From Ylistrum balloti (Eukaryota): a stretch of DNA of 64,000 bases. The position numbers and the translations under genes were made by a program. Positions 31,348 through 52,500 of the stretch are shown piece by piece. The number at the start of each line of letters is the position of its first letter. The stretch's first letter is position 1. The stretch lies in NCBI RefSeq assembly GCF_031769215.1, contig NW_026781952.1:124001-188000 (forward strand), read 5' to 3'. The notes beneath the pieces were generated by a model. That model searched no databases. It saw nothing but the letters and a program-made list of their open reading frames with translations, and had not been told where the DNA came from.

Positions 31348-33839
31348 CAATGTTTGTGTATAGTGTGACATTTAGTGGCTTATAACATTCAGTCAGTGTA
31401 TCAGATCCACAAACTGCACCAACAGAGAGCTAAAATCTGGATCCTGAGAGTGGTTATAATATTTTGAATAAACAAGTATTTTCTTGATATAACTGACAAT
31501 TATTGCAATCAAGACGATCCCTGTAGCTTTTTAGTGTAAGTATTGACTGTAGCTTATAATGTTTTAATTGGAAAAGAGTTGACATTTTACAGAATTTGAA
31601 ATAAACTGATGTTTAATCTATTACAGTGATTCCCTTTTTTATTTTTGCTTGCGGTAAATCATATATCAAACATGATATTAACTTGCTCAATTAAAATGAA
31701 CCAGGGTCTTTTATTTTAATAAATATCATCATCATCATCATCATACCACCTTGATATCAACATTATAATGACCTTCCCAATCACATTATTATGAAGAATT
31801 TTATGAAATATTTCCACCTTGGGATACATGTATCAAGAAAGCTCTAGGTCATTTATTTGTTAAATAAACTTAACCATATTTCATCCTTGTGAAATGCTTT
31901 TTGACTTTGATTACTCTGAAGATTTCTGTTTGATTAAATACTTTCTGAAAAAGGCTCAGAGGCCAAGCTGAACATGTAATATAGATTGTAATAATCACAG
32001 AATACTTATTTTGGGTTTGGGCTGGTTTTGAATAACAAAGGGACCACATTGATCAAATTCAGCCTTACGGAAATATGCAACAGTGAATACATCATCACAA
32101 AATAAAGCAAGTTATTGCCAAATCATCCTAATTTATTTCCATCATTTGCTCCCCCCTCCTCCTCTACTGCACACAGGGCCCCCCTGCCTTCCCCCACCCC
32201 CACCTCTACTTCACACAGAGGGCAAGCCCCCACGCCCTACTTCACACAGAGGGCAAGCCCCCCCGCCCCTTCCCCAAATTCATTCCCTTTTTCGAATACA
32301 GTAAAATCACTTGTCTACATGCCTGCTTATACAATGTATAAAGTTATCATATCGTTTTCTGGTACTTCATTGCAAACGTTTCAGAAAATCTGATCATCTG
32401 ATCAAGAGAAGAAGCTCAGGACTTTTAGGGCGTTTAAAGATATTTCTTATACATGTTTGCTAACCAAAGGTTCATCTCATATACATTTATTTACCTTCAC
32501 AGATATAGCAATATTCAAATAATTGTACCTGTGCTTTTCAGGCATCCATTCAAATCAAGGCTTACATCTAGGCTTGATAACTGAGGTAAACAGTGATGGT
32601 GGTGCATGGACAATGACAGTATACAAGATGAACCCTTGGTTAGTGAAGAATTAGGATGCTGACACTTACACACTACAACTTGCTGTCTCCACAAGATGTT
32701 ACTTAAAACAAGAATATTTGGAACCAGAAGAACCAGTATTTGATCATCCTATTTCTTTTCTAAAGGAGACCTTATTTGGAAAATAAACAATAATACACAA
32801 ACATCACAATTTGGTTTTAGAATTAAAATTTCTTTTATTTGATATAACTAAATTTATAACCAAAGCATCAATAATATGAAAACCCATTATGGCACATAAC
32901 TATGTCATACAAAGAACACTATGACATTGAAGCAACATGTTCCAGTAGTTGGGTGGTATAATACTTGAAACTATGGCTGGGTGATTCATCAATCACCTTT
33001 AAGGCCAAAACTGTACAACTATACAGGTATTTTCCATGTTATATCCCACAATGAGAACAGTAAACACTGTCATCCCGCTAAAAACAGAAATTATATAGTT
33101 ACCATAACTTTGTTTTGATAATATTTTGTTCATTAAAGTTATAAAATAATGGTCTTTTAAGACAAAAACAATCAACAAGCTGACATAACAGTAGAACTAT
33201 TTCTTCAGTTCTTCAGAGAGAATCATGCGAAATAAACAAAGAAGGTGTTTTTTTTAATAAAAGGGAAACAAAAACAAAAGAATAATTTATAAGCATAAAT
33301 AACATACAAGATAATTACATTACCTACATTTTAAAAAATCCTATATTTAATATCATACATTATTTCATATCAACTATTTAAATTTTCTTTTCTATAGAAA
33401 ATTTCTGATATTACTTAATCATTTTAAATGCAAATGTAATACATACCCTCTACATTTTATCATATTTATAAAGTATCAAGTAAAGTAATAAAATATATAC
33501 TTTTTAGAATATAAATGTACACTTGTAAACTATTCAGCTGTAATAGACAATTAATACAACTATAGCTCCATACTGTTAATCTTATACATACACTATTACA
33601 GTACCACGAGACCAGAATCAGTACATCCAAACCTGTGGGTTTATACGTCAATCATAAGTACAGTAATAAAGATCAGAAACTTTATAAAATCATTTGTATC
33701 TGTTTAGTGTCATCTACCCTGGGAGTCCATCGAAACATCATTTATTGTATAACTTCTAATTCCATCTGTCGCAGAATCCATCACTTGTTAGTGAGGAAAT
33801 CCATAATACACTATTCTAAGGATGGAATAAGATCGCAGG

Positions 33840-35375
33840 CATCAGATACCTTGACAACAGATACCTTCATGACAGATACCTTGACAACAGATACCTTCAT
33901 GACAGATACCTTGACAACAGATACCTTCATGACAGATACTTGACAACAGATAGCTTGCCAACAGATACCTTGACAACAGATACCTTGAAAACAGATAGCT
34001 TGCCAACAGATACCTTGACAACAGATACCTAGACAATAACTACCTTGACAACAGATACTTTGCCAATAGATATCTTGGCAATAACTACTTTGACAGTAGA
34101 CAACAGATACTTTGACAATAGATATCTTGGCAATAACTGCTTTGACAGTAGAGATACCTTGACAACAGATACTTTGACAATAGATACTTTGACAACAGAT
34201 ACTTTGACAATAGATATCTTGGCAATAACTACTTTGACAGTAGAGATACCTTGACAACAAGATACCCTAATGGCAGATACCTTGACAACAGTAACCTAGA
34301 CAATAAACACTTTGAAAATAGATACTTTGACAATAGATATATGGACAATAATTATCTTGACAACAGATACCTTGACAACAGATACTTTGACAATAGATAA
34401 CTTGACATCAGATACCTTCATGACAGATACCTAGACAATAGATACCTTGACAACAGATACCTTGACAACAGATACTTTGACAATAGATAACTTGACATCA
34501 GATACCTTCATGACAGATACCTAGACAATAGATACCTTGACAACAGATACTTTGACAATAGATACCTGTACAACAGATACCTTGACAGTAGTTACCTAGA
34601 CAACAGATACCTTGACAATAACTACTTTGACAATAGATAACTTGACATCAGATACCTTCATGACAGATACCTAGACAATAGATACCTTGACAACAGATAC
34701 CTTGACAATAGATACCTGGACAACAGATACCTTGACAATAGATACCTTGACAACAGATACTTTGACAATAGATACCTGTACAACAGATACCTTGACAGTA
34801 GTTACCTAGACAACAGATACCTTGACAATAACTACTTTGACAATAGATAACTTGACATCAGATACCTTGACAACAGATACCTTGACAATAACTACTTTGA
34901 CAATAGATACCTTGACAACAGATACATTGACAATAGATACCTTGACAACAGATACCTTGACAATAGATACCTGGACAACAGATACCTTGACAGTAGTTAC
35001 CTAGACAACAGATACCTTGACAATAACTACTTTGACAGTAGAGATACCTTGACAACAGATACAGAGACAACAAGATACCTTGACAACAGATACCTTGACA
35101 GTAGAGATACCTTGACAACAGATACCTTGACAGTAGAGATACCTTGAAAACAAGATACCCTAACGGCAGATACCTTGACAACAGATACCTTAACAACAAG
35201 ATACCTTGACAACAGATACCTTGACAGTAGAGATACCTTGACAACAAGATACCCTAACGGCAGATATCTTGACAACAGTTACCTAGACAATAAATACTTT
35301 GACAACAGATACCTTGACAGTAAAGATACCTTGGTAAGAAGTCATCTTGACAATAACACCAATGAACATAATTAT
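33840..35375. repeat. Degenerate compound minisatellite, about 15-bp unit ACAGATACCTTGACA
   Basis: About 100 short units with variants; many frameshifting repeat ORFs appear on both strands. Confidence 0.92.
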
Positions 35376-37401
35376 ACTGTAATTGTCTATTCACTTCAGC
35401 AAGAAAAAAAAACAACTTTGCTTCAAACTTAATCCTATTAGTCCATCTATAAACTGGATGTTTGTTAGGTAAGATAATTGTAAGACCAATTTTTATAAAA
35501 TCTATATAATCACACAACAAATCTATTCCCTTTATTTCTTCAATTTGATCCTAACTCCAGAAGTTGAAATCCATGAATAAAAATACAGTTCAGCAATCTA
35601 GAATGTAATTAACAAATATAATAACTTCAAGAATAATTATATTAAATATCTTGAAAATATAACATGTCAAAGAAATGCAAGGAAAAAATCCCTCCCTCTG
35701 TAAATGATCTATCGAATACTCCATTTTTACCTTGAAAACATCAAGCTGTTGCAACAATTTTATACCTTAAGGGAAAATAGGATGAAAAGATGTATGTTCT
35801 GGAACACTCTTAAAACTGGAGCAAAATGAAAAAGAACAAAAATTAACAACAGAAAATATATAATTGTATGGTAATTGTACCTTCTGTCAGTTTTATCTTT
35901 CTCAAACCAAAAAATTGTATTCAGTGTAAATAGTTCTGATAAGCTTAAAAAGAGGTATATTATCATGAGTTTTAGAATTAGCTACAAACCATTAAAATAT
36001 GTGAAAACCTGCAGCATTACAATTTACTAACAAATTATAGTCATTGAACACACATAAACTAATACTTGTTCTGATGATGGATGGCCTAGCCATATGAAAC
36101 ATATCAACATTAATCTCAAAAACCACGGAATCCTTGGTGCTCCATTCTACTTTTAGAATATTACTGTTTCACAGATCAAAGCAAGTCGCATGGCAGTCTA
36201 CGTTAAAGTAAACTAGACAGGCTTCTACAAAACATTTAAATCACCTCCAAGTTTGAGATTCTATATTGACAGTTTACATAATATTCAGTGTAAATTTTCA
36301 AGCTCATATTATGCAAGAAAAGTTTGAGAATTCTTAGAAGTGAACATCATAATGGTATAATTTAATACTTAACACATTGATGTACTTGACTATATAACTT
36401 GTGGAGAATTATCAATGTTATTTCTTTATAAGATACATAAGTACAAAACCATGCACAGAAATGTACCCTATTTATCTAACTAGCTCACCCATGACTATAG
36501 ATGTTCATTACAATAACAACCAATGTACATCCATTGTCCTGTTTCCAAGTCCCTGACTTCTGAGTTAAACACGGTCACTGCCAACATAATGAATTCTAGG
36601 CGAACTTTCAATTTTTCCACATAAACAGGCATTGCTCTAAAAACTTTACTCCTGTTTTCTTAGTTTCCAGCTTGACGAGGAAACACTTTCTGAAAAACGT
36701 GTGATCTCCAGCTTTATTTAGAACAGTGCCCATTTGTATCAAAAATGTCAACAAAGGGAAGAGTGTGCAAAATTGTGGAGCATTAGTAGTAACACGGTGA
36801 GTTTGATTGAATTTCATTGTAAATATCAAAAACATAATGGGATAAAAAGGCTAAATATAGCTGCCTCATTCACATCTAGTCAGTCTGACCAATTTGATTG
36901 AATGAAGAATTCATGCACTTAAAGGCAATTCTCAGAAATCTTGGGAATATAGTATTCAATTACAAACATAACTATTTTTAATTCCAAAGAAAAATGAACA
37001 CTTTCTTCAGCATTCTAAAACTAGAATTAAATATTTCTAAAACTAGAATTAACTATTTCAAAAACCTCAATTGCTTCTTGTTAAACTATTTCCAGTAAGT
37101 TGGAATGAACACATATCTAATAAAACTTATTTTGACACTGGTAACCATCACCAAATTTCCTTCCCTCTAGGGGAATGTTTCGGTGGTACATGTAATCAGA
37201 AAATGAGAGGCCCCATCACTGTCAGTGATTATACAACACCTATTTTGATAGCAGCCTCTGATTCTTTTCTTCAGTATACTTGGCCTTCCTCTATTCAAGC
37301 TTGTTGTAAATGTTTCAGAGACCATCCTGTAACTTCTTGTATCAGATGTTTTGCTCTCTGTAATCAACATCTACTGAATGCTGTTCATGTTTTGCTGATG
37401 T

Positions 37402-40400
37402 CTACAATACTACTGGTGTCTGATGTCCAACCCTCTGAAGTAAACGCTGTCTCTCTCGATTCATGCTTGTTGTAAATGTTTCTTGTTGATGATACCGGAA
37501 CACTTTCAAAAAGGCAAAAATTGTCAATAACAGCCAGCAAATCCATAACATCCAACCACCAAACTGGAAAAAATACACAAAAAGAGATGGTTATTAATTA
37601 CATCATCAAGTTGTTGATCATTTCGTCTAATTATCAAGCTTTGATGAAAATAAACTCAGATGCCATTGTTTGGTTAAGGCATCATTAGAACCAGAACTAT
37701 TCCCAAAAATTATTAAATATCCAGACATCAGTAAAGATGGTTTACTGAGTTTACAGAGTTGGAGGTCCCCCGCCCACCACATCAGAACACTGGCGTTTGC
37801 TGCCGAGACAACCTTTAGCTATATGAAGAGTCACAGAGACAGAAAATCTGTAATTTATCAATTAAACATTGCTTGTGTCTTGATCCTACCTGGTATTACC
37901 TTCGTCAGTGAAAATAAAAGTATCACTGGTAAATCATATACTGGTAGATTATTATCAGGTTTGTGTGTTACCATGTCCCATTACAATGTGTGAAATACAT
38001 ATAACTACCTGTGCCAGAGTCATTTCTGTGTAAAAATTTCGTGTATCCACTTGTGTACTTTTGTCTGTAAACTGGATGTAATCTCCAAACTCGCACCTGC
38101 AGAAAAAATTAAAGTAATTTAGACTACTAAGATTGATTACTGTCTTTTCACCCAGAAGCTGTATCACCAACCATTAAGAATCATGGTCCAATGAGCCTGC
38201 ATTGATCAGCTGATATTCAATATGCTATTCACAAATAGATTAACATTTCACATCATTGACATTCAAATCTCAGTTAATGAGAAAAAGTCATCTTCATTCT
38301 TTAACAAATTTGACCTCTGTGAATTGAGATATATGAGCCAAGGTCATTTCTTTTTGTGAACCATGTTGGGCTTCATGTCAAGAACCTTACAGCCAAATGC
38401 GATAAATCTAGGGCATCTGGTTACTGAATAGAGCTCACTTCAAGTTTTTCACAAATTTGACTTCTGTGACCTCAAATACCGGTCAAAGTCAATTTTTCTC
38501 ACAAAATTTTTCTGACTTCATCCCAGGAACTTATTTGCCAAATATAATGATTATAGGTTTGGTTATTGAAAAGAAGTTGTTTGGGCCAGGTGAACTAAAA
38601 TTGTTCAGGATGACAAATCAAACAGGTAAAGGCAGGTGTTAATAAACTCTCTCCTGCCCTTCTATATATATATATATACCCATCATCACAGGTTATTATC
38701 CATTTCTGGTTTTTTTTGGCTGACAACTGGAAGTCAGTTATTAAATTTCAGATGTCAAATAGACAAAATTTCAGCTGTCATCCGTATAAAGTTGGCAGTA
38801 ACACATTGGACAGACAGACAGATGTCAAGTAGATAGAAAATTTCAGTTGTCGTCCGTATAAAGTTGGCAGTAACACGTTGGACAGACAGACAGATGTCAA
38901 GTAGATAGAAAATTTCATCATTATAAACATGGCAGTAACACTTCAGACAGAAAGATAGACTTTGTACATAAATGCATGCAGACATTGGACAAATATATAA
39001 AATCATATATATCATATGTTTTCAAGGAGTTCAATTTTAGCGGTTTTTCAAAAGATTGCTTTTTCATAGGAACTTGATTTTGTGGAAAAATATAGCTCCA
39101 TAAATGTATGTATGCTTATCTTAACTTTTTGATACTATGACTTCATGAACTGAGAGTAACAATGAAGTCAATGCCGAATAAAAAAAAATCCACAAAAATT
39201 TTACATTAAAGAGTTTGTATAAATTGACAATCTTTGTACAGATAGACATTGAACAGGTAAACAGTGTTGTCACTGTGAGCTGGGGGAATTATAATATCGG
39301 TGGTGAAATGGTACAGCCTGCCACAAACAACCCATCAGCCACGTTTTTTTTTTTTCCATCAACTAACTTTATTAACCTCAATAGAAAAGAGTTCCAAAAT
39401 TGGAGTTGCGTCCCCTGGACCCGTGGGTCATGCCAACTTACCTACCCAACACCCCAATACACAACATGCCCCCCCCTCAAAAATAAAAATTGGCACAATT
39501 TTTACATGGGTAGGAAGTGACATGAAATACAGGATCCAGGTTCGAACAAAAATTTACATAATATTTTATTTTCAAAAGAGTGGTTCAGGAAATGAACTGA
39601 GACATGACACCCGGAAGTCCTCAAGTACATATGAGTATTAAAGATTCATCGACTACCAAATATGCATCACCAACATAATTTCCATCACATTCACACACAC
39701 TAACATTTTCCATGGTACCAATTGGAACTTTCTTACACTCTAACTTACAGGAAATAATGTTAATGAGGGCTAATGTAAGCAAACTGCTAGGTTTTTTTTT
39801 TTTTTTTTTTTAAAAAAAGATTAGAAAATGTATAGGAAATCCAGATATCATGGCAAAGTACAAACAGAAGTCAATTTATATTTGATAATTGAAAAGTAAT
39901 AACACTTTTTAACAAAGCAACTGTTCTAAACATGGAAATATTACATTGAATAATGAATGTATATCATGAAGTTGTAAATCACAAGTAAACATGCAAGGCA
40001 TATGGGCACTATACTTGATTAATATCAGCCAATCATATGAGCATATGTAAATTCTTATATCATTCAAATGATGAAAATACAGTCTATCAAGCTCGCTGTG
40101 GCTATATTCAATTAATCACAAACTTAGCAAACACTTGCAGTTATATGACTTAAATTGTAACTTCAGACATTTCATAATTTCACATTAATTCAGCAAGGCC
40201 TTGACCTCAAACAATGTCAAAACATTGAGTTATATCAATCAATACAAGCTTATAAGCAAAGTTTAGGTAAGTTACGAGACTCGAAAATTGTATCCATGTG
40301 TTTTTCATCCATGAATTCCATCACACATTACAGTTATTGAAATTTGAATAATTCAATCAATGAAAATTATTCCATAACAGAAGGAATGAATATAAAGCAT

Positions 40401-43400
40401 TTTATGTACAAATATTTCATACTGTCTCAGGTAATTATTGAAAAATCAAACCTGACACAAGAAAGACAAGCAAGTAAAGTCAAGAAAAAGAATAATACCC
40501 AGGTAATTATTTGATAACCAAATGTTATCTGTACTGTAAATTGAAATTTGATGAAACAATTTTGAATCATGAATTTGAAACTTATAATACATTATATTTT
40601 ACATATTACATAGGCATGTAATCTCAAAAGGCAAATTTGACATTAAAAAAACAAGAAACAACTATTTTAAGGATCACCACTCAAAATACTAAATGACTAT
40701 ATATCTTTAAGGATAACCAACTAAAAAAAATAAATTTTAAGGATACCTGACCCATGATTCTATGTGTATTGAATCCTAAATTTTAAGGATGAATCACCCA
40801 GTCATAAGAGTTACCAAGAAATTAGGGCTTATCAAAATATAGTCATACTGAACATCATAAAACATCTTAATAAAGTATGATACATAGCAAAGCAAATTGA
40901 CTGTAGGAAAATCAACAAGTATATGTTATACACACTGAAGAAAACTAGCAAAATGTTAATTATGTCTCTAAATATATGCTAGTCAGTTTGACATGTGCAT
41001 TTGTGGTATCTAGCGAATAACTGGAGGTGGTTTACACTCAATATTACGCTTGGTTTTGATATCCATTTTGTGTAGAGGAACCCAGATGGAGTGCTGAGCA
41101 GGCTCACCGACAAGGTGGACAAGATACTTTCCATCAGAGACCCTCTGTGCCAACACTCTCTTGACCTTTACATGTCCTTGGTCATCTGAGGAGAGAGAGC
41201 TAGAGATTGAAGAATTAACTTGGTGTGGGTCAACATGATCTGAATCACGGTATCGTAGAGGTAATTTCCGAACACGTTGAGGACGCGTAGGTAAAGGTGC
41301 ATTATCCACATTGTCACTTGTAAGAGCTGTCTCTGCCTCGTTTTCAGAATGACTGGTGTCCAACCCAGGGTCCTCGAGTGACACTGGTTCATGTACAGAA
41401 GCACATGCGTGTGACGTAGTAACTTCATCCAGAAAAAAAAAATGAGGGTTTGGTCTACGGACATGGGCCATTTTCAGGCGATCCAGATGAATGGCACCAC
41501 GGAGAGACTTTCCAGACGAAGGGTCCTCAAGAATGGCAAGATGGGGACTTGAAACAGGTCGTTGAGTAGCTTGTTGACCCATAAAATGATGATCACCTGG
41601 CATAGAATAACCAGTCCTATCAAGGGTCGTGTACGCTTCATCACCACCTCTATCCCGGAGGGAATGTAAATCGTCCATGGATGTAGGACCCAACAAGACA
41701 CGATCGCGATGAAACGGGGTACTAGAACAGTTTGGAGTAGGGTTCTGGGGCAAATTACGACCTGGAATGTTCATTCTGAGTGTCCCTTAGATTCCCATGA
41801 AAATGTCACAAAAAATAAATGGCGACATTGAGTGATGGGGCTGTCTGATCACGTGACTGGTATGGCTCGAAATAGGTCGGCGTGGCGCAGTTTGTCAAAG
41901 GCTCAAAGTTCATTTGATACAGATAAATACAACACTTCATGCATATATTCACGCTTATCGATTGAGAAAACATTCTGGTAAATTAGGATTCTCCACCATG
42001 TTGTCGCTGTGAGCTGGGGGAATTATAATATCGGTGGTGAAATGGTACAGCCTGCCACAAACAACCCATCAGCCACGTTTTTTTCCCATCAACTAACTTT
42101 ATTAACCTCAATAGAAAAGAGTTCCAAAATTGGAGTTGCGTCCCCTGGACCCGTGGGTCATGCCAACTTACCTACCCAACACCCCAATACACAACAACAG
42201 TCTCTGCACAAATAGACAGCTTTGGACAGACAGACAAGCATTGGACAGAAATTGGACACATAGACAGACTTTGGATATTTCTGCCTTAGATTTATACTTA
42301 CTGGAGAATGTCTGATGGTGGCGTAGTCAGTAACGTACACCAGATGTTAAATCCAACACTAAGTGTGAGAGAGGAGGCAAACAACATCAGAAAAATCACC
42401 AATGACAAGATCGCAGTCACAAAGGCATCCAGCCATGAACTGAAACACATCAATATTCACTTGTTTGGTAACAAAATCAAATAGGCTTGAATCCTTCACA
42501 TTTTTAGCTGCTTTATGTACAAACTGCATCAAATGGATAAAGTTTTGAGATCCGATGAGCATGGTTTAAAGCTCCTTGTGGCAGATTATTTTTCTCAGGA
42601 AACTGAGTAGTCCAAATTATTCTGACATTCTATCAATGTATATATATATATATCAGCTTTGAGTGAACTCAAAGCCAATATATCAAAGTTGACAGGATGT
42701 CAGAATAATTCAGATTAGAAGCTAAGAAATGGACCAGTTTGTACTGACTTGGTTGTTTCTTGTACAAGACACTAACCTTGACTGCATTGGAAGGCATGTG
42801 ATGGTCCTCCCCCCTGTTATTCATTGTAGTAGCAACAGGCCTTAAAATTACCTTGACCGTTCACAAAACACAAGTTTTTCATAGCAGACAGATTAAATCA
42901 GAAACCTCTCAATGGTTTCATATTATGCATCAATGAAATATCATGTCATTTTTCTATATCTAATTCAGCCTTTTTCTTGTCTACTTCATCTGCTCAGCTG
43001 ACAAGTAGACTAGATTGTGTGGGAACATGTTTAGTATGTTACAACTTCGAAAATGAAAGTAGAAAAAGGAATCGAACATTTTCAGTAGACAAGGAAAATA
43101 AATACGTTTCAAAATAAACCGTTACCTGTCGGTGTCTTTAATCAGATACGCAGATTCCCATACAGTGTAGAACATAGATATCAACATGACAACAACACCC
43201 ATGAAGATGTTGAAGCCACATGCACTGGAGGGACCCCAGACGACATTTTCCAGCTCCATTTGAGACGAATTGATTCTGCTCACCCATTTTCCTTCGGCGT
43301 AAAGAAGACAATGTCCATCAAATTCGTTTACATTAACAGCTACAGGTATGAATAACACAAACGCCACTATGAACGAAACAAAATAAGTCGTCACTTGAGA

Positions 43401-43427
43401 CAGAACAAGAATATTACCGAGGCCCAT
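37402..43427 (-). CDS. TMEM179: Transmembrane protein 179 family; 4 coding exons
   Basis: Minus-strand exons 43427-43126, 42439-42302, 38096-38009, 37563-37402 (TAG), phase-consistent. Motifs FDGHCLLYAEGKW, WGPSSACGF, SVGFNIWC, NFYTEMTLAQFGGWMLWICW and AFLKVFRYHQQE match the recalled TMEM179 pattern, with four hydrophobic segments. Confidence 0.9.
38745..38945. repeat. 72-bp tandem repeat, about 2.5 copies
   Basis: AAAATTTCAG..GTC.TCCGTATAAAGTTGGCAGTAACAC occurs at 38765 and 38837, with a partial third copy. Confidence 0.85.
39265..42196 (-). mobile_element. Non-autonomous (internally deleted) Ty3/Gypsy-type LTR retrotransposon in TMEM179 intron 2
   Basis: Direct repeats 39265-39466 (202 bp) and 41999-42196 (198 bp), TGTTGT...ACAACA, differing by one substitution and a poly-T length change. 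TSD ACAG at 39261-39264 and 42197-42200. PBS TGGTGGAGAAT directly after the 5' LTR on the minus strand. PPT GAGGGGGGG just before the 3' LTR. Internal ORF resembles an integrase C-terminus. Confidence 0.92.
41010..41774 (-). CDS. LTR-element ORF (254 aa): Gypsy integrase C-terminal region with a degenerate chromodomain
   Basis: ATG-started open frame with SPHLAILEDPSSGKSLRGAIHLDRLKMAHVR (GPY/F-region tail), RPQRVRKLPLRYRD and a chromo-like end VKRVLAQRVSDGKYLVHLVGEPAQHSIWVP. No RT, RNase H or integrase core is present in the element. Confidence 0.72.
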   Translation of the reverse strand: MNIPGRNLPQNPTPNCSSTPFHRDRVLLGPTSMDDLHSLRDRGGDEAYTTLDRTGYSMPGDHHFMGQQATQRPVSSPHLAILEDPSSGKSLRGAIHLDRLKMAHVRRPNPHFFFLDEVTTSHACASVHEPVSLEDPGLDTSHSENEAETALTSDNVDNAPLPTRPQRVRKLPLRYRDSDHVDPHQVNSSISSSLSSDDQGHVKVKRVLAQRVSDGKYLVHLVGEPAQHSIWVPLHKMDIKTKRNIECKPPPVIR

Positions 43428-43530
43428 GTCGAAATCGTTATAGAACCCTCCCTAGCACATGACTTGTTTACTTCCGGATTTCCCAGAATGCATTGAAATA
43501 TTGATGTGACAAAGTTGGAAGTAGGACGAA
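43428..43530. promoter_or_regulatory. Compact bidirectional promoter between TMEM179 and PRPF39
   Basis: Only 103 bp separate the two ATGs. It contains an E/M-box CACATGAC (43456-43463), an ETS site ACTTCCGG (43470-43477) and a Staf/ZNF143-type site TTCCCAGAATGCATTG (43480-43495). Confidence 0.7.
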
Positions 43531-46500
43531 ATGGCAGACGTGAAAGACAATCAAGGTAATCCTATTGTAATCTTATCGTTGGAAATATACATCAAACGCT
43601 CTTTTTATTTTCCCAGTGTCATATTTTCATGCCAGATAGTAATTTTCTCACATGCATTAATTATATGCGTTTATTTTCTTCTAATCAGCAGTCTGGAAAG
43701 GGTAGCGTTATGGAACCTCTTGTTAAACATTGGGCATAGATTATATTAAAAGTTTTCTCGTTGTATTCGTTTTGACAAGATAAAAGGACTGCTCCTTAAG
43801 GTAATATACATAATTCCATCAAATATAAGAAATGCCATTTCGTTTTGAGTTTGTTTATGCAATGCAAAACTGATGTTTTTACACGTAGCATGACCTGTTT
43901 TGACGAATTCTGATAAATGTTTGTGCATTTAACAACTCGGTTTTCATTATGACAGAAGTTACAGACAAACAGGAAACTGAAGAAGATGCTCCAAATGCAG
44001 AAGAACCTGCCAAAGAGACGCCTGTCGAAGTTGCTGCCATGAACACTGAGCTTGAAAAATACTGGAAAGCTGTGAGGGACAATTCATCAGATTTCACAGG
44101 ATGGACTTACCTTCTTCAATATGTAGAACAAGAGGTGGATACAGTTTTTTTCAGAAATAAACTTGTATATATTAATTTACATTTCAAGTCATGTGAATTC
44201 TGAGAATTTTCATTTTATTTTCAGAAAAGTTTAAGAAATTTCATGATCGAAATGGAAATCAATTTGATATCCTTTTTAACAAGAGATTAATTCATTCAGC
44301 AAAATGGTAGAAACATGCTAAAAGATCAGGGAGGGGTAATAAAAAATACCCTGTTCCCATTGCTACTACAGTTTTAACTAACAACCCATTGGTCTGGTTT
44401 GACTGATGAGAAATTTCCCAAATTCTTTATCAAACCAAGAAGTTGCAAAACAGCAGTAACAAAAACATGCACAATATAACTAGTAAATATGATCAGAAAA
44501 TGTTATCTCATGACATGTCTTCCAATACTTGTTTTTGTAATATTTAGAAAGTAAACACTTTGATAATGGAGTTCAAAACATTTGTGCCATACAAAATATG
44601 TGTGTGTAATAAATACTTTGTTTGGTATAAATAGTGATTGTTTACACATCTATCAGCTCTTGTTCAAGCACTGTATTTTTGAAAAGAATCAATTATTTAT
44701 TAATTGATTACAACATAACAAAAATGTTATATACAATAAGAAATGTAACATTAGGTCAGAAGAGCTATTGTTGTCAAAAATTACTTGTATAGATAATGTA
44801 TTATTTATTTAGAAAATTGTTGCAGCCGTACTTATAAATCAAATTCATGTTTAAGGTTAGCTGAGCAGGTTCTCTAATATTGTGCTGCAATCAGCTAGTT
44901 GTGGAATAAAATGAAAAGCAAAATTGTACTTTTATCATTTCAGAATCAAATTGAGGCAGCAAGAGAGGCATATGATGCATTTTTTGATCACTATCCGTAC
45001 TGTTATGGGTATTGGAAAAAGTATGCGGACATGGAAAAGAGACATGGTAATGTCGAAAAAGCAACAGAGGTACAGTTCAATGTTTCAGTTGTAAAACATT
45101 TCAATGGAAAAGATCACTGTAAATCACTTTTGTTGTGCAAGATTTTTCACTTCAATTATTTATGAGATGTGAAAGATAATTTCATTTACTTTGGAAATGT
45201 TCCATTAACCATATAAGCAACATATTGATTGGTGCTCTTTTTCGTGATTTCATAGTCTTGAATTCAAGGCACACTTGCCACAAGGAAGTGATTTTCAGTT
45301 TTCTTTAAGCACTGAAATAGACCAATTTTTCTATTTAAAAAAATATTAATGAGGTGCAAGGACTCTCTCAGTACTATATTGTAATCTATTTTTATTGTTT
45401 GAAGTAAAGGGAAACTGCATTTATCTCTCTGTCTGTGGAAATTGCTCTGGTGAAAAGAACAAAGCCATGTGGATAAGCCTTCTTTGGCTAAACATATATT
45501 TAACCTTTTTTCATTTTGTTTTGTTTTATTTTTTTTATCATTTTGAAATAAATACAGAAATGATTTTTAAAAAAGACTGATCAGAGAAACAGGACTGTTT
45601 TCAAAACAGAAGCTGGTCATATTCCAGATCCCTGTTTATTGAGTGTGTGACAGTTTTGAAATTTTATTGCCTTGTGTTTTCTAATTTCCATTTCATGCAA
45701 TCTAATGACCCAGCAGCTGGGTTGGAATGAATTATGTTTTAATCTTAAGTTTGACAAGGAGGTGTAAAATTATTATGAAAATCAAATGTGATTATGATTT
45801 TTCACTGTCTGGATTATCAAAACGTGAAAAAAATCTGCTTTCATGTGTGGCGTGTTCAGGAACCAGTGTTCATATTTTGTATCCTCAAATTTTGAAAATT
45901 TGTGAATGACTGCTTGTCATGGAGTAAGTATATTGGATACAGAGTCATTTGCCATGCATGTGATACCAGCCAAATGAAGCTTGAAATATATATATTTTAT
46001 AGAATACTTTAAGATGGGGCCATGTTGGGAAAGTGGTCTTCTTTCTATTTTAAGTTGTATATATCATGACTCATCAACATTATAGAGTAAATGATGGTTC
46101 ATATTTTAGTTACATTTGTTCCTGATATTAACAGGTAAGACCATCTCTTTATTTACAGCCAAGTCATGTGACCTCTCAGCAGAGTTCTAATATATATTGA
46201 TTGATACGGCCATTGTAAAACTGATGGAATGTAGGATGTATTCATATACAGCTTGTATATCATTGTTGGTGCTTAACTGATGTGCATAACTTTTTTTCAT
46301 AAACAATTTTGGAGATTTGGAGGAAAATTACATCTTGTCATTTTGATATCTTGTCTTCTAGCACTTGTTCAAATACATCTTTTACACTTCTGTAAATTCA
46401 GATTTTAAAAATAAACAGAAAAAAATATTACCTTTTCAAAAAATATTTTGCTATGAAATGATTGATTAGGTATATTTACAACAGAGATATAAGTGATTGA

Positions 46501-49500
46501 CTTCATGATTGTATTCAAAGGGTCAGAAACTGAAGGCAAGGTATTAAAATCAAGATTGTTTGGGCTATAAAAGGAAACCTTTGTCAGTGATAAAATGTTT
46601 TTCTTTGCAGAAATTGAGTAACCTTGACTTTGTCTCTAATGTCTAAGCTGATGGGAAATGATTGCTTAAATTTTCCCAAATGTTCTTGGCCCTTTGTTCA
46701 TGAGGGATCTTACAATCTCTTCCTAGTTGCTCATCCCAAGCTAGGAACCCAAGACATCACCTAGAAGGGGACACATGGTCAGCACAGCAGAAGAGAAACA
46801 CAAAAGTTTGTACATCGCGTTGACTTGCACAGGAATTTTTTTCCGATGGTAATGCCGCGAATCACTGTTGGTCTTGTATATTTGATGTTGAATGTGATGC
46901 CGGATTAGATTTGGATTTAAAACAAGGGGAGTAATCATGTACTAATTTTCCACCCTTTTTCCTCGGCAGGTGTTTGACAAAGGTGTTGAAGCAATCCCAC
47001 TGAGTATAGAATTGTGGCTACATTATATCAACTTTTACATAGGAGAATACACCAGCACAGAACAGGGTGAATCTGACATTAGGAAGTGAGTTCCAATTGA
47101 AACAAGTTTAAATTAAATTTAGTTGTAAGAAGTGAAGTAAGTCAAGTGTTACATCGGCGTTAACTTCCACCACAAATTTCGAAAGTTTACAGTTTAATCT
47201 GTTTTTCAGAAATGCAAATAATTTGGTTACATTCAAAACTAAAATAGAGTTTTGAATAACTATGTCGGATTTCTAATTTAAAAAAAAAAAACATAAAAAT
47301 TTTAATGGAATTTTAGAATTCAGAAGAACCCCTTCAAAAAATATCAAATTGACTTTTGTCACCTCTTCATGAATAGTGTTACTGAATACGTTAAACAGAT
47401 TTTTTTGCCACTGTAAATTTTTTTAAAAGTCAAAGTGGGACAGAATTAGAAATTTGGATCTGTTTAATGTAAGAGATCATGATGGTATATGCTAACAAAG
47501 TCTGTGTTTTTCTTTTAAGAATTTCATTGCCTTTTTAAGTACAGGTGGTAAATAGTAAGAAAAGAAAGACCTATTTTTCAGCCTGTTTTCATTAATATTT
47601 GTCCATTCTAGGTTATATGAGAGAGCCATACAAGCAGCAGGCCATGACTTTCGGTCAGACAAGCTGTGGGATTCGTACATTTCCTGGGAGAAGGATCTAG
47701 AGCGTGTGACAAAGCTGTACATGCGATTACTGGCTATACCCACACAACTCTACAGTCATCACTTTGACAAGTAGGTTCTCCTGGCTACAACCTCTCTTCT
47801 ATGATAAACAGTTTCTACAATCTTCTTTGCAACCAATGATTTCTTTTATGTAGTAGAATTATCAGGGAATAATAAAATCTCTCTTGTTGATATAATGATG
47901 ACAGTGAAATTTCAACCTGAGGAGAGTATATAGTTAACGCTTTGTCCAGACTACCTATTCTTAGAGGGGAAATCTTTGAAAATGATAGAAAAAATACAGT
48001 GCATGTTAGTAGAACTTTCTATAATCCATAGGCTCATACTGCTCAATTGTATTTGATTTTTATCATTCTTTTTCACAACAGTGTTCGAAACATTTGGATT
48101 GATAAAGAGACTATTTTGAAGATCTGCATTTGATGTGAACACCAAAAGAATGGGACGGAAAAAATGCATTCCACTTGAATCAGAGATCATTTTACATAAT
48201 ATATTCTTTACTTCACATTCCAGCTTCAAACAGCATATTTACATGCATAATCCTAAAGAAATTTTGAGCCTTGATGACTTCCTGAAGCTCCGACAAGATG
48301 TTGTTGCCAAGTCTGCATCCCCTGATGAGGAAGATGAAGATAATATATCTCCTGGAGATGTAGCCCCTCCTGGGGAAGAGGATGTGCCCCCGGGTATGGA
48401 GACGGTAGGAGGAAAGGTAAAAATATTCTAAAGTAACAAGCTATACTATCTCTTCAATGATAGTTGTACAGTTGTAGCCTTAATTGTAGTAAAAATCTTT
48501 TTTGTCCTGCCTTTTTTCTTTTGTTTAAACTTAAGGCATCTGTTAATACTTTCATTGGATGCCTCCTAGCAATGAAGATCATTCTTTTGTCTAAAGTTTT
48601 CATGATTTGTCTATAGCCTTGAAAATTTCACAAGTTACTACTGCAACAACAGAAACAATGTTGAATGAAGCAACACTATCAAATATATTATGTTTTAATT
48701 TTCATTAGGGAGATGAAGCAGAAATCAACAAGATAAAGGAGAGAATCATACAGATTCAAGAGGAAACATTCAAGAAGACGGAAGAAGAAGTCAGCAAGCG
48801 CTGGAATTATGAGGAAGCAGTAAGTGTTAAGGGGAAAATCTTAATAGTCCTTCTTGGTGTTGGTACTCTTACAAAGATAGCAAACCTAAACTCTACAGAC
48901 AGGTATATAATCCATACTGTTGGGAAAAGTAGTAATAAGTTGTTAGTCCAAACATTTGTTTTTAAATTCTTTAGATCATCACAATTATCACTGAACTGGA
49001 GAAATTTTCTCTCTACCTAAAGTAAGTAAATGAATGATAATCATTCTAAAAAGGGGAGGTGGGGGGTTGTTAATTGAAAAAAAGTCAAAAGTCATTCTTT
49101 ACAAATTTATTGTAGTAAAGTGTAAAATATTTGTTTTCAGGATTCTTGGTTTTATTTTCTAAACACTACCATCTGTAATTGGAACATTTTATTGTGTATT
49201 TTATATATTACTACAGAAATCATAATATGTGATGTGATGCAACATTTATGTTTATTTGCAGATAAAAAGACCATACTTCCATGTAAAACCATTAGAGCGT
49301 TCTCAGTTGAAAAACTGGAGGGAGTATTTGGATTATGAAATGCAGAATGGGGATTACAAGAGGGTTGTGACATTATTTGAACGTTGCATGATTGCAAGTG
49401 CTCTCTACGAAGATTTCTGGATGAAGGTATTCAAAAGTTTTCTTTAGCCCCCTATCATCAGAATTGTTAAGATCACCCTTAAACAATAGAGTTTCATATT

Positions 49501-52500
49501 TGCAACACAATATTATTATATCAAGTTCTACACATGATCAAATTTTGGGAGGCATTGAAGCAGGGCATTTATATCTTAAAGAGATTTTCTGGATATTTAC
49601 TAAAATAAATACAAATATTTCCCTAGTATGCGAAGTACATGGAGGACCATGGAGCAAATGGTGTGCGCAATGTCTACACAAGAGCCTGTAAAATACACCT
49701 ACCAAAGAAGCCTTACATCCACCTTGCTTGGGCAGCATTTGAAGAGCGACAAGGTAAGCAGTCTAGGAATAAATATGTGTATAAATTAAATGACAGCCTT
49801 CAGGATCATATTAGAAGGATACATATGGTATTGTTTATGACTATCCAGAAAGGGGATAACTTTTTGAAGATTTTTCATATATATAGGGGTAATACCTGTA
49901 TGAAGACCCATCAGAAAAGTATTTAGAGGGAGATTTATCACATACATATTTATATATATGAGATTTTCTTTTTTTACCTGCAGAGAAATATCCATTATTG
50001 TTGATTTTTTCTGCTTTACTTGCAGGGATGTGTCCATTATTGTTGAATTTTTCGTGTTAACCTGCAGAGAAGTGTCCTTAATTTAATGATGTAGATGTAT
50101 CAACAGCACTCGGTCTGATAATATTTACTAACATAACATAGGTTTTATCTTTCACTTAATATAGAAAACCACTCTGCTGCCTGGGAGATTCTAGCTAATC
50201 TAGACAAAGCTGTGCCTGGCCTAGTGATGGTTTCTATGAGAAGGATCAGTCTAGAGAGGAGAACTGGAAGTAAGGAAGATGCTGAGGCTCTGTTCCGTGA
50301 ATACATAGAGAATGCTTCACAGCCAGAAATAGGCTCCTACTTCTCAATAAAGTATGCTCGTTATCTCTTCAAGGTAAGAATTTTTAAAGTGCCTTTCTTA
50401 AAAACAAATGTTAATTATATGCAGAACATGGAGAAAATTTTCAGACTTTGAATATCTCATACAGTAGCACCTCTCAAAATTTGTTACATAAGGTTTTATC
50501 CCATGGCTAAAATCTGTAATTTCTGAAGTAGGTATGATTTCTTTTAGACTTCAGTACCCATGACAAATCAGACTTGTTTCAAATTGTTAATGTTCCGAAT
50601 TGTATGTATAAACTTGATTAATATGTTGATATGCATGGTAACGTTGGTTACATGTTAACAATGCAGAGTATGTTGATAATACAATATGTTGTACCTGCAA
50701 CTGATAGGGGATAAACAATAGCCCTACTTAAGGGATAAACAATAGCCCTACTTGTATATATATATCTTGGGGACCAAACCATAAATTTCTCAAAAATGTT
50801 TGGAATTAACTTGTTAAGATTTACGAAAAACTAGATAGGAAATAGTTTGTCATGATGTTTGAGTCTTCACTTTGTCAGTAATATTGTCTTATATTTACTA
50901 GAGCTTTTGTTTTGTTGAACTTGGGTTACAACAATATCTAATATTTAAACTTATTGACATGAAAACTATCTGTTAAATCAGATTTGTGGAGAGCGAGAAC
51001 AAGCCAGGAAAGTACTATCTGATGCCCTAGAGAAAGACAAGGTAAGTTTACAAGAAACATTGAATTACTTGTCAGCACAAATTTTTATTTATTTTTGATA
51101 ACAAATATATGAGTGGTTTATAGCAGTATGTGACAACCTGTGAGGGTAGTGAATGTATGGAAAGAGTGATATAGTGAGGATATCAGTTCCTGAGTATTGG
51201 ATGTGGTTTAATTGTAGGGATTGGTCAGAGTACCTCTCTATAGAAACACAAACGTGTATAAATTGTTGGTTTCAAAAATTCTTAAGTAATTTTATCCATA
51301 ATAATTACATTCATTTTTTCTCTGATGGAAAGTGTTCATTTTGAAATTGTGATAAAAATTGTAAATTCAACTGGATGTTTTGCTATACAGGGTAACCTAA
51401 AGTTGTACCTCCAACTTATTGATCTGGAGTACCAGAGCTATCCAGTTGAGGAGGAGAAGATCACAGAAGTGTTTTCTATGATCCTAGAGTGTGAAAATTT
51501 TCCCTTAGAAACCAAAGTTAAGATGTCACAGAGGAAGCTAGAGTTCCTGGAAGATTTTGGAGGAACCATTTCAAAGTAAATATTAATTGTTATCTACACA
51601 AAAAAGGGTCACTTGTTCAACCATTTGGGCTTTCTTTATTGCTGTTTTCCACCTTCAATGGGACCCCAAGCATCCTTCTATCTGAGATATATATGTCTAT
51701 ATATATATATGTAAATAAAAATGATTTTTGACAAAAGAAGAAAGACGTTACATTTTGCACTAGCGTTTTCACTGTATTAGATCTTCAGGTGCATAGTAAC
51801 TGTACATAATGGTGTGGCGTCAGCCAAAAAATTTGAAAAAATATCTAGCACGTGCATCATTTTCATCAGAAACAAAGTTACCGGAAGTCAATACTTGTCG
51901 AGAAAAGAGATGTGGAACGTGTCAACATATCATAACAGGGAATTCCTTACAATTAAAAAGTGGAAAGAAGTGGGAAGTTAAAAGCAGTATGAACTGTAAA
52001 TCAAAAAACGTGATTTACTTAATCCTTTGTCCAAAATGTGGAAGTTTCTATATAGGACAAACAGAAAACCTCCACAAACGCGTAACATTACATCGCAAAC
52101 AAATATCCCACGAAAGATACAGACATCTACCAATCAGCCGACACGTAGCAGGATGCAACGACGGCTTTTTCCAAATCTTCCCCCGTATACTTTTTCATCT
52201 GAAACCAATCAAATACAAAGAGAAGCCAAGGAGTCAGAAATTATAAACATTTTAAAACCAGACTTGAATATTAATGTTTAACCGCATTGTAAAGTTTGCA
52301 AAATATAATTATGCCCCTTTTATATTATGATGTCATCAACAGAATACATGTTGTGACGCCACACCATTATGTACAGTTATTATGCACCTGAAGATCTAAT
52401 ACAGTGAAAGCGCTAGTGCAAAATGTAACGTCTTTCTTCTTTTGTCAAAAATCATTTTTATTTATAATTTACTCGCATCTCGTCAAATCAAGTTTTTTCT

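What the first reader, a model, noticed from the sequence alone, without database searches (positions are those of the whole stretch)
39265..42196. Young 2.9-kb non-autonomous LTR element whose only ORF is an integrase tail plus chromodomain
Seen in sequence: all cis hallmarks are intact, namely roughly 200-bp LTRs differing by one substitution plus a homopolymer change, a 4-bp ACAG TSD, PBS TGGTGGAGAAT and a G-rich PPT. There is no gag core, RT, RNase H or integrase core, yet a stop-free 254-aa ATG ORF remains, ending in a chromo-like domain followed by about 1.5 kb of non-coding sequence. Established knowledge: the PBS matches the 3' end of tRNA-Ala(AGC) (…ATTCTCCACCA), and chromodomain integrases direct chromovirus targeting. 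Inference: this may be a TRIM/LARD-like family mobilised in trans that makes a stand-alone chromodomain protein. The domain seems to lack aromatic-cage residues (no leading Y/F; HL where KW is typical), as in group II chromodomains.
Basis: partly seen in the sequence, partly recalled or inferred. Interest (0 to 1): 0.72.

Follow-up and report, generated by a model that had tools for sequence, protein, structure and literature searches.

The report
One-off deleted scallop Ty3/gypsy copy
This is a very young, internally deleted copy of an 8.4-kb chromodomain-carrying Ty3/gypsy retrotransposon in a scallop genome; its 254-codon reading frame is an accidental fusion of the start of gag to the integrase tail, so it is an ordinary defective copy, not a new kind of mobile-element family.

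Summary
The element lies on the minus strand and has two ~200-bp LTRs, a 4-bp ACAG duplication and a G8 polypurine tract. Its 13-nt primer-binding site matches this genome's own tRNA-Ala(AGC). A stop-free 254-codon ORF is followed by 1.5 kb of AT-rich non-coding DNA.

The element is not a TRIM/LARD-like family. An 8,359-bp sibling on contig C1249 shows that the window copy lacks exactly 5,434 bp, from the gag core to the integrase GPY motif. This junction occurs once in the 648-Mb assembly. Four other copies carry different deletions.

ORF254 consists of gag residues 1-74 joined in frame to the last 180 residues of pol. The tail is a genuine but divergent chromodomain:
- 9 of 16 paralogous tails hit Pfam Chromo.
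- Their profile hits CBX5 at 3e-5.
- The AlphaFold model matches only chromodomains.
- All three aromatic-cage positions are replaced (V/L/E).

One unexpected detail is that a T-run inside the ORF is T10 here and T9 in the three sibling copies. Only T10 keeps the chromodomain in the frame conserved in related families. The ORF has no private substitution, so its intactness says nothing about selection. This is a new member of a known kind, of modest interest.

The parts
39261..39264 (.). Target-site duplication ACAG, left copy
   Evidence: the same 4 bases directly flank both LTRs.
39265..39466 (-). 3' LTR, 202 bp. It carries the copy's private substitution and a lengthened A-run.
39469..39476 (-). 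Polypurine tract: a G8 run on the element strand, 2 nt from the 3' LTR
   Evidence: The run is G8 in C698 as in the window, G11 in C1249 and longer still in the C202 mini copy; C240 gave no reading.
39477..41009 (-). AT-rich 3' non-coding internal region, about 1.5 kb, present at over 99% identity in all sibling copies
   Evidence: No env-sized ORF lies downstream of pol here or in 12 paralogous loci.
41013..41177 (-). Divergent chromodomain (ORF residues about 200-254): three strands plus a C-terminal helix. The aromatic-cage positions are V, L and E.
41013..41550 (-). Integrase C-terminal tail (ORF residues 75-254): the post-GPY segment, an acidic/Ser-rich linker, the RPxRxxKPxRYRD motif and the chromodomain
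   Evidence: it aligns collinearly with the in-frame pol C-termini of related families.
41433..41442 (-). T10 homopolymer inside the ORF (Phe-Phe-Phe). It is T9 in the three sibling copies, where the tail falls out of the pol frame.
41550..41551 (-). Deletion junction. 5,434 bp of the full-length element (its positions 646-6079) are missing between these two bases. Microhomology is 1 nt, and there is no GT..AG.
41551..41774 (-). gag start codon and gag residues 1-74, identical to gag in the C1249 and C1024 copies
41775..41985 (-). 5' untranslated leader between the PBS and the gag ATG
41986..41998 (-). Primer-binding site TGGTGGAGAATCC, 13 nt complementary to the tRNA-Ala(AGC) 3' end plus CCA
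41999..42196 (-). 5' LTR, 198 bp
42197..42200 (.). Target-site duplication ACAG, right copy

Best explanation
Window 39265-42196 (minus strand) is a single, very recent insertion of a defective copy of an 8.36-kb Ty3/gypsy (Metaviridae) retrotransposon. The family is primed by tRNA-Ala(AGC), and its integrase normally ends in a cage-less chromodomain.

The copy lacks one 5,434-bp block that runs from gag codon 75 to just after the integrase GPY motif. By chance the deletion joined the gag frame to the pol frame. The native gag ATG therefore opens a 254-codon fusion: gag 1-74, then the integrase tail, then the chromodomain.

Shown:
- the deletion and its exact borders;
- that this junction is unique in the assembly;
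- the fusion structure of the ORF;
- the chromodomain homology and fold;
- the tRNA match.

Inferred, at about 55-60%: the deletion arose during reverse transcription by template switching inside a particle supplied by a then-competent family member, and the short cDNA was then integrated normally. This would explain the perfect LTRs and the 4-bp duplication.

The ORF is best read as a neutral by-product, not an evolved stand-alone protein.
For: 1. The sibling at G000:C1249 (L017:1079-9437, minus) is 8,359 bp with its own ATAT duplication. It has gag (Retrotrans_gag / Ty3_capsid) and pol with a protease DSG motif, RVT_1, RNase H, Integrase_H2C2 and rve.
2. The window copy aligns to it at 98.9-99.5% over positions 1-645 and 6080-8359, with nothing in between.
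3. All 11 candidate places in the genome were scored, and only the window holds this junction. A second search with flanks found no other copy, no empty allele and no full-length allele.
4. The other defective copies have different borders: C240 lacks 533-5616, C698 lacks 391-5889, the C1024 fragment lacks 1500-6654, and the 567-bp C202 mini copy lacks nearly everything internal. Where both flanks can be read they have their own duplications (GTCG, CTCG).
5. The copies differ by only 0.22-0.44% in substitutions, almost all private to one copy. The ORF has no private substitution.
6. The tail matches 62 places in this genome. In many it ends open frames of 1,640-1,955 codons.
7. It aligns collinearly across the T-run with four related families.
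8. Chromodomain evidence:
   - Pfam Chromo hits 9 of 16 paralogous tails, best E 7e-7.
   - Their profile hits CBX5 at 3.2e-5, and then CDYL, CBX2 and HP1.
   - The AF2 model has a block-mean pLDDT of 91-95 over residues 31-85, with three strands and a helix.
   - The top 50 Foldseek hits are all chromodomains, with probability 0.9-1.0 for most and TM by target 0.5-0.7 for most.
   - VIA-align gives Z 5.4-6.5 and rmsd 1.5-2.9 Å over about 50 residues.
   - ESM Atlas neighbours are Chromo and SH3_Tf2-1 integrase tails.
9. tRNA: 18 tRNA-Ala(AGC) genes have the matching 3' end, and the PBS match is 13 nt.
10. For an origin at the reverse-transcription stage: the C202 mini copy reads as LTR, then an 18-nt stretch identical to tRNA-Ala positions 59-76, then an inverted LTR piece, the PPT and the second LTR. 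This fits a plus-strand strong-stop DNA end that misprimed on 4-nt microhomology.
Against: - The Pfam Chromo model does not hit the window tail itself, even at E up to 10.
- Foldseek E-values are only about 0.02, and Z of about 6 is modest for a 50-residue domain.
- Nothing here separates a deletion before integration from one after it. Junction microhomologies are 0-2 nt, which suits either.
- In the C202 copy only one base is uniquely tRNA-derived. The other four are shared with the inverted LTR piece, so the reverse-transcription signature is suggestive, not proven.
- One assembly cannot exclude further copies of this junction in unassembled or collapsed sequence, or in other individuals.
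- Transcription and translation were not testable.
Confidence: 0.85

Rival explanations
1. Post-integration deletion. A full-length element inserted here, and host illegitimate recombination or end-joining later removed 5.4 kb from its interior.
For: Junction microhomology of 0-2 nt is typical of end-joining. Nothing in the sequence dates the deletion relative to integration. Internal deletions of LTR elements by illegitimate recombination are well documented in plants (established knowledge).
Against: Five of the six LTR-bearing copies (four with an LTR at each end, plus C240 with a truncated 5' LTR), or five of seven once the LTR-less C1024 fragment is counted, carry large and different internal deletions, although the four copies that could be compared over the shared 3' region differ by under 0.5% in substitutions. 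That would need an unusually high and element-centred genomic deletion rate. The mini copy on C202 carries an inverted LTR piece joined at the end of an 18-nt tRNA-identical stretch, which points to errors during reverse transcription in this family.
Confidence: 0.33
2. This is a TRIM/LARD-like non-autonomous family that is repeatedly mobilised in trans and has retained an ORF because a stand-alone chromodomain protein is useful to it or to the host.
For: All cis signals are intact, and the ORF starts at the native gag ATG. The chromodomain is real. The window copy is the only one in which the tail is in frame.
Against: There is one copy of this junction in 648 Mb. The other defective copies have different borders and do not encode this protein. 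The ORF has no private substitution, so there is no test of constraint. No similar protein of 140-445 aa was found. At 2.9 kb the element fits neither the TRIM size (<1 kb, PMC6934838) nor the LARD size.
Confidence: 0.05
3. Assembly artefact. The deletion, or the T10 run, is a collapse or homopolymer error in the contig, not a feature of the genome.
For: Four of five homopolymers of 7 nt or more in the shared region differ in length among the four copies. That is the pattern expected from long-read homopolymer errors as well as from real slippage.
Against: The junction lies in unique, non-repetitive coding sequence, with a clean in-register alignment on both sides. Flanks and the target duplication are intact. 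Four other loci show independent deletions. For the deletion itself an artefact is unlikely. For the T-run it stays open.
Confidence: 0.03

Closest known systems
Chromoviruses: Ty3/gypsy elements with a chromodomain at the integrase C-terminus (e.g. Tf1, MAGGY, sushi, Tekay, Reina)
   Same: Gene order is gag, then pol with PR-RT-RH-IN, then an integrase GPY module, a linker and a C-terminal chromodomain (full-length sibling). The fold is a chromodomain.
   Different: All three aromatic-cage positions (Y/W/Y-F in HP1) are replaced: V/L/E in this family. Across 16 related scallop tails, the first position is Y in 6 of 16, the second is never W, and the third is an invariant E within a GEP motif. 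Group I keeps Y-W-Y. Group II lacks the first and third and had been reported only from plants (PMC3605345). Placement in the chromovirus clade by RT phylogeny was not tested.
Chromodomain-carrying Ty3/gypsy ('ancient errantivirus') clade of Cnidaria, Mollusca and Annelida (eLife 2026, PMC13524379)
   Same: The host phylum is the same, and a chromodomain lies C-terminal to the integrase, recognised there too only by sensitive profile search and AlphaFold.
   Different: Those elements were collected because they carry env. This family has 1.5 kb of AT-rich sequence with no ORF after pol, and none of 12 related loci shows an env-sized ORF within 1.5 kb. Whether it belongs to that clade was not tested.
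Defective proviruses and LTR elements made by internal deletion (retroviral template-switch deletions; non-autonomous derivatives such as BARE-2 or Dasheng)
   Same: LTRs, PBS and PPT are kept, the coding interior is lost, microhomology at the junction is short, and the copy depends on proteins made elsewhere.
   Different: BARE-2 and Dasheng are amplified lineages with many copies of the same structure. Here every deleted copy is unique.
TRIM elements of bivalves (biv-TRIM, PMC6934838)
   Same: It is a non-autonomous LTR element in a bivalve, and the 567-bp C202 copy of this family is TRIM-sized.
   Different: biv-TRIM is under 1 kb, is found in 11 species, and has no canonical PBS and no known autonomous partner. 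The window element is 2.9 kb and single-copy, has a textbook PBS, and its parent element is identified.

Membership tests
Ty3/gypsy (Metaviridae) LTR retrotransposon | Direct LTRs with TG...CA ends, flanked by a short target-site duplication | tested here: met
   LTRs of 198 and 202 bp, TGTTGT...ACAACA ends, 4-bp ACAG duplication.
Ty3/gypsy (Metaviridae) LTR retrotransposon | PBS complementary to a host tRNA 3' end next to the 5' LTR, and a PPT next to the 3' LTR | tested here: met
   13-nt match to this genome's tRNA-Ala(AGC) plus CCA. G8 run 2 nt from the 3' LTR.
Ty3/gypsy (Metaviridae) LTR retrotransposon | pol domain order PR-RT-RNase H-IN (RT before IN) | tested here: met
   Met in the full-length sibling only: DSG protease motif, RVT_1 at 455-613, RNase H at 676-805, IN zinc finger at 1184-1241, rve at 1257-1349. 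In the window copy these regions are deleted.
Chromovirus-type integrase | Chromodomain at the integrase C-terminus, recognised by sequence | tested here: inconclusive
   The window tail does not hit Pfam Chromo. However, 9 of 16 paralogous tails do (best E 7e-7), and their joint profile hits CBX5 at 3.2e-5.
Chromovirus-type integrase | Chromodomain fold: a three-stranded sheet plus a C-terminal helix | tested here: met
   AF2 block-mean pLDDT of 91-95 over residues 31-85. All top Foldseek and VIA-align matches are chromodomains, with Z 5.4-6.5 and rmsd 1.5-2.9 Å.
Chromovirus-type integrase | Aromatic cage: group I has Y-W-Y; group II lacks the first and third positions (the second is understood to be kept) | tested here: not met
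   The positions aligned to CBX5 Y20/W41/F44 are V/L/E in the window. The third is an invariant E in all 16 tails, and none has W at the second (definitions from PMC3605345).
Chromovirus-type integrase | Placement inside the chromovirus clade in an RT/IN phylogeny | not tested
   No reference chromovirus RT set was at hand in the tools.
TRIM / LARD non-autonomous LTR families | No RT or integrase coding capacity, with intact LTR, PBS and PPT | tested here: met
TRIM / LARD non-autonomous LTR families | A family: several insertions that share the same internal structure | tested here: not met
   The junction is unique in the assembly, and the other defective copies have different borders.
TRIM / LARD non-autonomous LTR families | Size class (TRIM under 1 kb; LARD several kb of non-coding interior) | tested here: not met
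   The element is 2,932 bp, with a 765-bp ORF and a 1.5-kb non-coding interior. The TRIM definition is from PMC6934838; the LARD size is from general knowledge.

The most novel reading that the evidence does not exclude
The T-run inside pol may be a real T9 in the family's source copies. In that case it could act as a slippage site for the polymerase or the ribosome, so that the family makes integrase both with and without its chromodomain. The window copy would then have fixed the 'with' state in DNA.

This would be a new way for an LTR element to dose its chromatin-targeting module. A related possibility is that the gag(1-74)::tail protein of the window copy competes with the family's integrase for its chromatin tether.
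Probability: 0.07. Interest if true: 0.6.

Novelty: new member of a known kind. Interest (0 to 1): 0.3.

Why it matters
The main value is as a clean worked example. One scallop genome holds a parent element and five independently shortened offspring that are under 0.5% diverged. This shows how often this family produces defective copies, and how a TRIM-sized element (567 bp) can arise directly from an 8.4-kb parent.

It also documents a mollusc clade of integrase chromodomains with no aromatic cage and an invariant GEP motif. That makes it a candidate for a targeting mode that does not read methyl-lysine in the usual way.

For annotation, the lesson is practical. A long, stop-free ORF in a young deleted element can be a chance in-frame fusion and should not be read as a gene.

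Tried and rejected
- **Pfam on ORF254.** The only match was a sub-threshold ThsB_TIR hit (13.4 bits, cut-off 21.2), treated as chance.
- **Word-index protein search with ORF254.** Nothing scored at E up to 0.001 among proteins of 140-445 aa. This says nothing about longer relatives.
- **tRNA search, first attempts.** One pattern required a canonical GTTCRA T-loop. Another required a fully Watson-Crick acceptor stem (GGAGAAT...ATTCTCCA). Neither found a tRNA. The match appeared once the G3:U70 pair typical of tRNA-Ala was allowed.
- **Splicing as the origin of the deletion.** Rejected, because no junction of the four copies examined has GT..AG borders.
- **Allelic relationship with the full-length copy.** Rejected, because the flanks and target duplications differ and the window's flanks match nowhere else.
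- **Decayed env in the 1.5-kb 3' region.** There is no ORF here or downstream of pol in 12 related loci. Absence of a very decayed remnant cannot be shown.
- **Rfam on 37000-44500.** No family reached threshold.
Not computable: the ORF has no private substitution, and the sibling copies differ from one another by only 5-10 substitutions.
- **Polarising T9 versus T10 by parsimony.** Abandoned, because 4 of 5 long homopolymers vary among the copies.
- **An early reading of the C202 copy.** I first took the 18-nt PBS there as proof of tRNA copying. I withdrew that to 'suggestive', because 4 of the 5 extra bases are shared with the adjoining inverted LTR piece.
- **Not run.** The exhaustive protein-representative search was skipped because it is costly and no claim here rests on absence of relatives. 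Complex prediction was skipped because no binding claim is made.


Full report
**1. What is at the coordinates**

The element lies on the minus strand of the window.

- Two direct repeats, 39265-39466 (202 bp) and 41999-42196 (198 bp), are the 3' and 5' LTRs.
- They begin TGTTGT and end ACAACA.
- They differ by one substitution and by a run that reads GGG-A7 in one and GG-A12 in the other.
- Both differences are private changes of the 3' LTR relative to all sibling copies.
- ACAG flanks both ends.
- Directly inside the 5' LTR lies TGGTGGAGAATCC. Directly inside the 3' LTR lies a G8 run.

The PBS partner was found in this genome itself. Eighteen tRNA genes end ...CCCGGATTCTCCA; 14 of them are identical in sequence. 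ARAGORN folds the sequence as tRNA-Ala(agc) with the G3:U70 pair. With CCA added, it matches the PBS over 13 contiguous bases.

**2. What the element is**

A search of the whole 648.5-Mb assembly with the element found an 8,359-bp sibling on contig C1249. The sibling has the following features.

- Its own ATAT target duplication.
- A gag ORF that hits Retrotrans_gag and Ty3_capsid, both below Pfam's cut-offs (22-23 bits, E 1e-4).
- A pol frame that overlaps gag in the -1 frame.
- A DSG protease motif, RVT_1, RNase H, the integrase zinc finger and the rve core, in that order.

The window copy matches sibling positions 1-645 and 6080-8359 at about 99% and lacks the 5,434 bp in between. The missing block runs from gag codon 75 to just past the integrase GPY motif. 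The window element is therefore an internally deleted Ty3/gypsy copy.

**3. The ORF is a chance fusion**

The ORF (41010-41774) starts at the native gag ATG. Its first 74 residues are identical to gag of the C1249 and C1024 copies. The deletion joins the gag frame to the pol frame (and frame arithmetic). The remaining 180 residues are the integrase tail.

The ORF carries no substitution private to this copy. The four copies compared over the shared 3' region (window, C1249, C240, C698) differ from one another by only 0.22-0.44%. A stop-free frame is therefore expected by default and is no evidence of constraint.

**4. Family or one-off**

All 11 candidate places found with the element were scored, and only the window has this junction. 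A second search that included the flanks found no further copy, no empty allele and no full-length allele.

The family in this assembly consists of the following copies.

| Copy | Structure | Target duplication |
|---|---|---|
| C1249 | full length, 8,359 bp | ATAT |
| Window (C95) | lacks 646-6079 | ACAG |
| C240 | lacks 533-5616; 5' LTR truncated | not readable |
| C698 | lacks 391-5889 | GTCG |
| C1024 | fragment without LTRs; lacks 1500-6654 | none |
| C202 | 567-bp mini copy | CTCG |
| C570 | solo LTR | ATCT |

Every defective copy has different borders. Microhomology at the junctions is 0-2 nt, and none has GT..AG borders. It is not an amplified TRIM/LARD-like lineage.

**5. When the deletion happened**

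The sequence does not settle this. I favour an error during reverse transcription, at about 55-60%, for two reasons.

- Five of the seven copies carry large and different internal deletions, although the four that could be compared over the shared 3' region differ by under 0.5% in substitutions.
- The C202 mini copy reads as LTR, then 18 nt identical to tRNA-Ala positions 59-76, then an inverted 80-nt LTR piece, then the last 60 nt of the interior with an expanded G-run, then the second LTR.

Positions 59-76 are exactly the stretch a plus-strand strong-stop DNA copies before the modified A58 (established retroviral and Ty knowledge).

This second point needs care. Thirteen of the 18 nt are the family PBS. 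Four (GGTA) are shared with the inverted LTR piece. Only one base is uniquely tRNA-like. The arrangement fits a strong-stop end mispriming on 4-nt microhomology, but it is suggestive, not proof. Deletion by the host after integration remains a serious rival, at about one third.

**6. The chromodomain**

The window tail does not hit Pfam Chromo, even at E up to 10. Several other lines of evidence support it.

- A six-frame search of the genome with the tail found 62 matches at 29-58% identity, apart from the four copies of this family (99-100%). Many lie at the end of open frames of 1,640-1,955 codons, so the tail is the normal C-terminus of pol in a group of related families.
- Of 16 such tails, 9 hit Pfam Chromo on their own, best E 7e-7.
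- Their profile hits human CBX5 at 3.2e-5, followed by CDYL, CBX2 and HP1.
- The AlphaFold2 model built on that alignment has block-mean pLDDT of 91-95 over residues 31-85, with three strands and a C-terminal helix.
- The best 50 Foldseek matches in the PDB are all chromodomains, most with probability 0.9-1.0 and TM by target of 0.5-0.7 for most; E is only about 0.02.
- VIA-align gives Z 5.4-6.5 and rmsd 1.5-2.9 Å over about 50 residues.
- ESM Atlas neighbours, by features and by shape, are Chromo and SH3_Tf2-1 integrase tails.

In the alignment to CBX5, the cage residues Y20, W41 and F44 correspond to V, L and E in the window. Across the 16 tails the first position is Y in six. The second is F, L, I or R, with one tail gapped there, and is never W. 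The third is an invariant E within a GEP motif.

The label 'group II' is loose, because group II lacks only the first and third aromatic residues (PMC3605345).

**7. The T-run**

Inside the ORF, at 41433-41442, the window has T10. The C1249, C240 and C698 copies have T9.

Only with T10 does the reading frame run from the post-GPY segment into the linker and chromodomain. That frame is the conserved one: window residues 75-254 align collinearly across the run with the in-frame pol C-termini of four related families. In the three T9 copies, pol runs on for about 90 codons with no recognised similarity and stops, and the tail sits in a separate 147-codon open frame.

T10 is private to the window copy, and almost all the other differences are private to one copy. 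But four of the five homopolymers of 7 nt or more vary among the four copies. The ancestral state therefore cannot be called, and assembly error is a live explanation.

As assembled, the only full-length copy also has a premature in-frame stop in gag ahead of its second and third zinc knuckles. The C1024 fragment has a sense codon at that position. No intact autonomous copy of this family is therefore visible in the assembly. These are descriptions of the copies only.

**8. Surroundings**

I did not test this.

- The element sits in a patch of short tandem repeats rich in GACAGACAG: a 72-bp unit at 38749-38917 and a 19-bp unit at 42214-42249. The duplicated ACAG is part of that motif.
- The C698 copy also lies in a tandem repeat.
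- The first recognisable PRPF39 exons lie on the plus strand at 44054-44158, 44941-45072, 46967-47089 and 47610-47771, with a C-terminal HAT exon at 49639-49926.
- The element is therefore about 1.9 kb upstream of the first detected PRPF39 coding exon, in antisense orientation.
- No Rfam family matches in 37000-44500.

**9. Comparison with what is known, and verdict**

Chromodomain-bearing Ty3/gypsy elements are classical in fungi, plants and vertebrates. A clade carrying chromodomains in Cnidaria, Mollusca and Annelida was reported in 2026 (PMC13524379). TRIMs are known in bivalves (PMC6934838).

The window element works like any defective LTR copy. It passes the structural tests for Ty3/gypsy and for a chromodomain-type integrase tail. 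It fails the cage test and the 'family' test for TRIM/LARD.

It is a new member of a known kind. Interest is modest, at 0.3. What interest there is comes from three things: the set of independent deletion derivatives, the cage-less GEP chromodomain clade, and the T-run that decides whether the chromodomain is in frame.

Noticed in passing
L021:2684-3250 (G000:C202:402183-402749): A 567-bp mini copy of the same family with a CTCG duplication. It reads as LTR, then 18 nt identical to tRNA-Ala(AGC) positions 59-76, then an inverted 80-nt LTR piece, then the last ~60 nt of the interior with a greatly expanded G-run, then the second LTR. It looks like an aberrant strand-transfer product, and it shows that a TRIM-sized element can arise directly from an 8.4-kb parent.
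   Followed up: partly
L017:1079-9437 (G000:C1249), minus strand: The only full-length copy of the family is not intact as assembled. It has a premature in-frame stop in gag ahead of zinc knuckles 2 and 3; the C1024 fragment has a sense codon there. Its T-run leaves the chromodomain tail out of the pol frame. gag and pol overlap by about 90 nt in the -1 frame.
   Followed up: partly
L017, pol residues 806-1183 of the full-length copy: A spacer of about 380 residues between RNase H and the integrase zinc finger. It is acidic, Ser-rich and low in complexity, with SESESKALP-like repeats, and has no Pfam match.
   Followed up: no
window 38300-38583: A piece of an abundant satellite with a period of about 145 bp. 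The 283-bp query matched arrays on dozens of contigs at 65-79% identity (910 first-look candidates, of which only 40 were scored).
   Followed up: no
window 38749-38917 and 42214-42249; also L019 flanks (C698): The window copy and the C698 copy both sit inside short tandem-repeat arrays. That is two of seven copies, which is too few to claim repeat- or heterochromatin-directed targeting by the chromodomain.
   Followed up: no
window 44054-47771 and 49639-49926 (+): PRPF39 exons (HAT_PRP39_N and HAT_PRP39_C). The LTR element lies about 1.9 kb upstream of the first detected exon, in antisense orientation.
   Followed up: partly
window 33811-34260 and 34858-35247 (-): Two Cys-rich open frames hit the low-complexity Keratin_B2_2 model (E 3e-10 and 5e-5). 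This is probably a Cys-repeat protein or a compositional match.
   Followed up: no
G000: C1305, C999, C172, C267, C86, C53, C440 and others: At least 62 places in the genome encode the same GEP-type chromodomain tail. Several lie at the end of open frames of 1,640-1,955 codons, so a diverse group of related Ty3/gypsy families with this tail is present in the scallop.
   Followed up: partly
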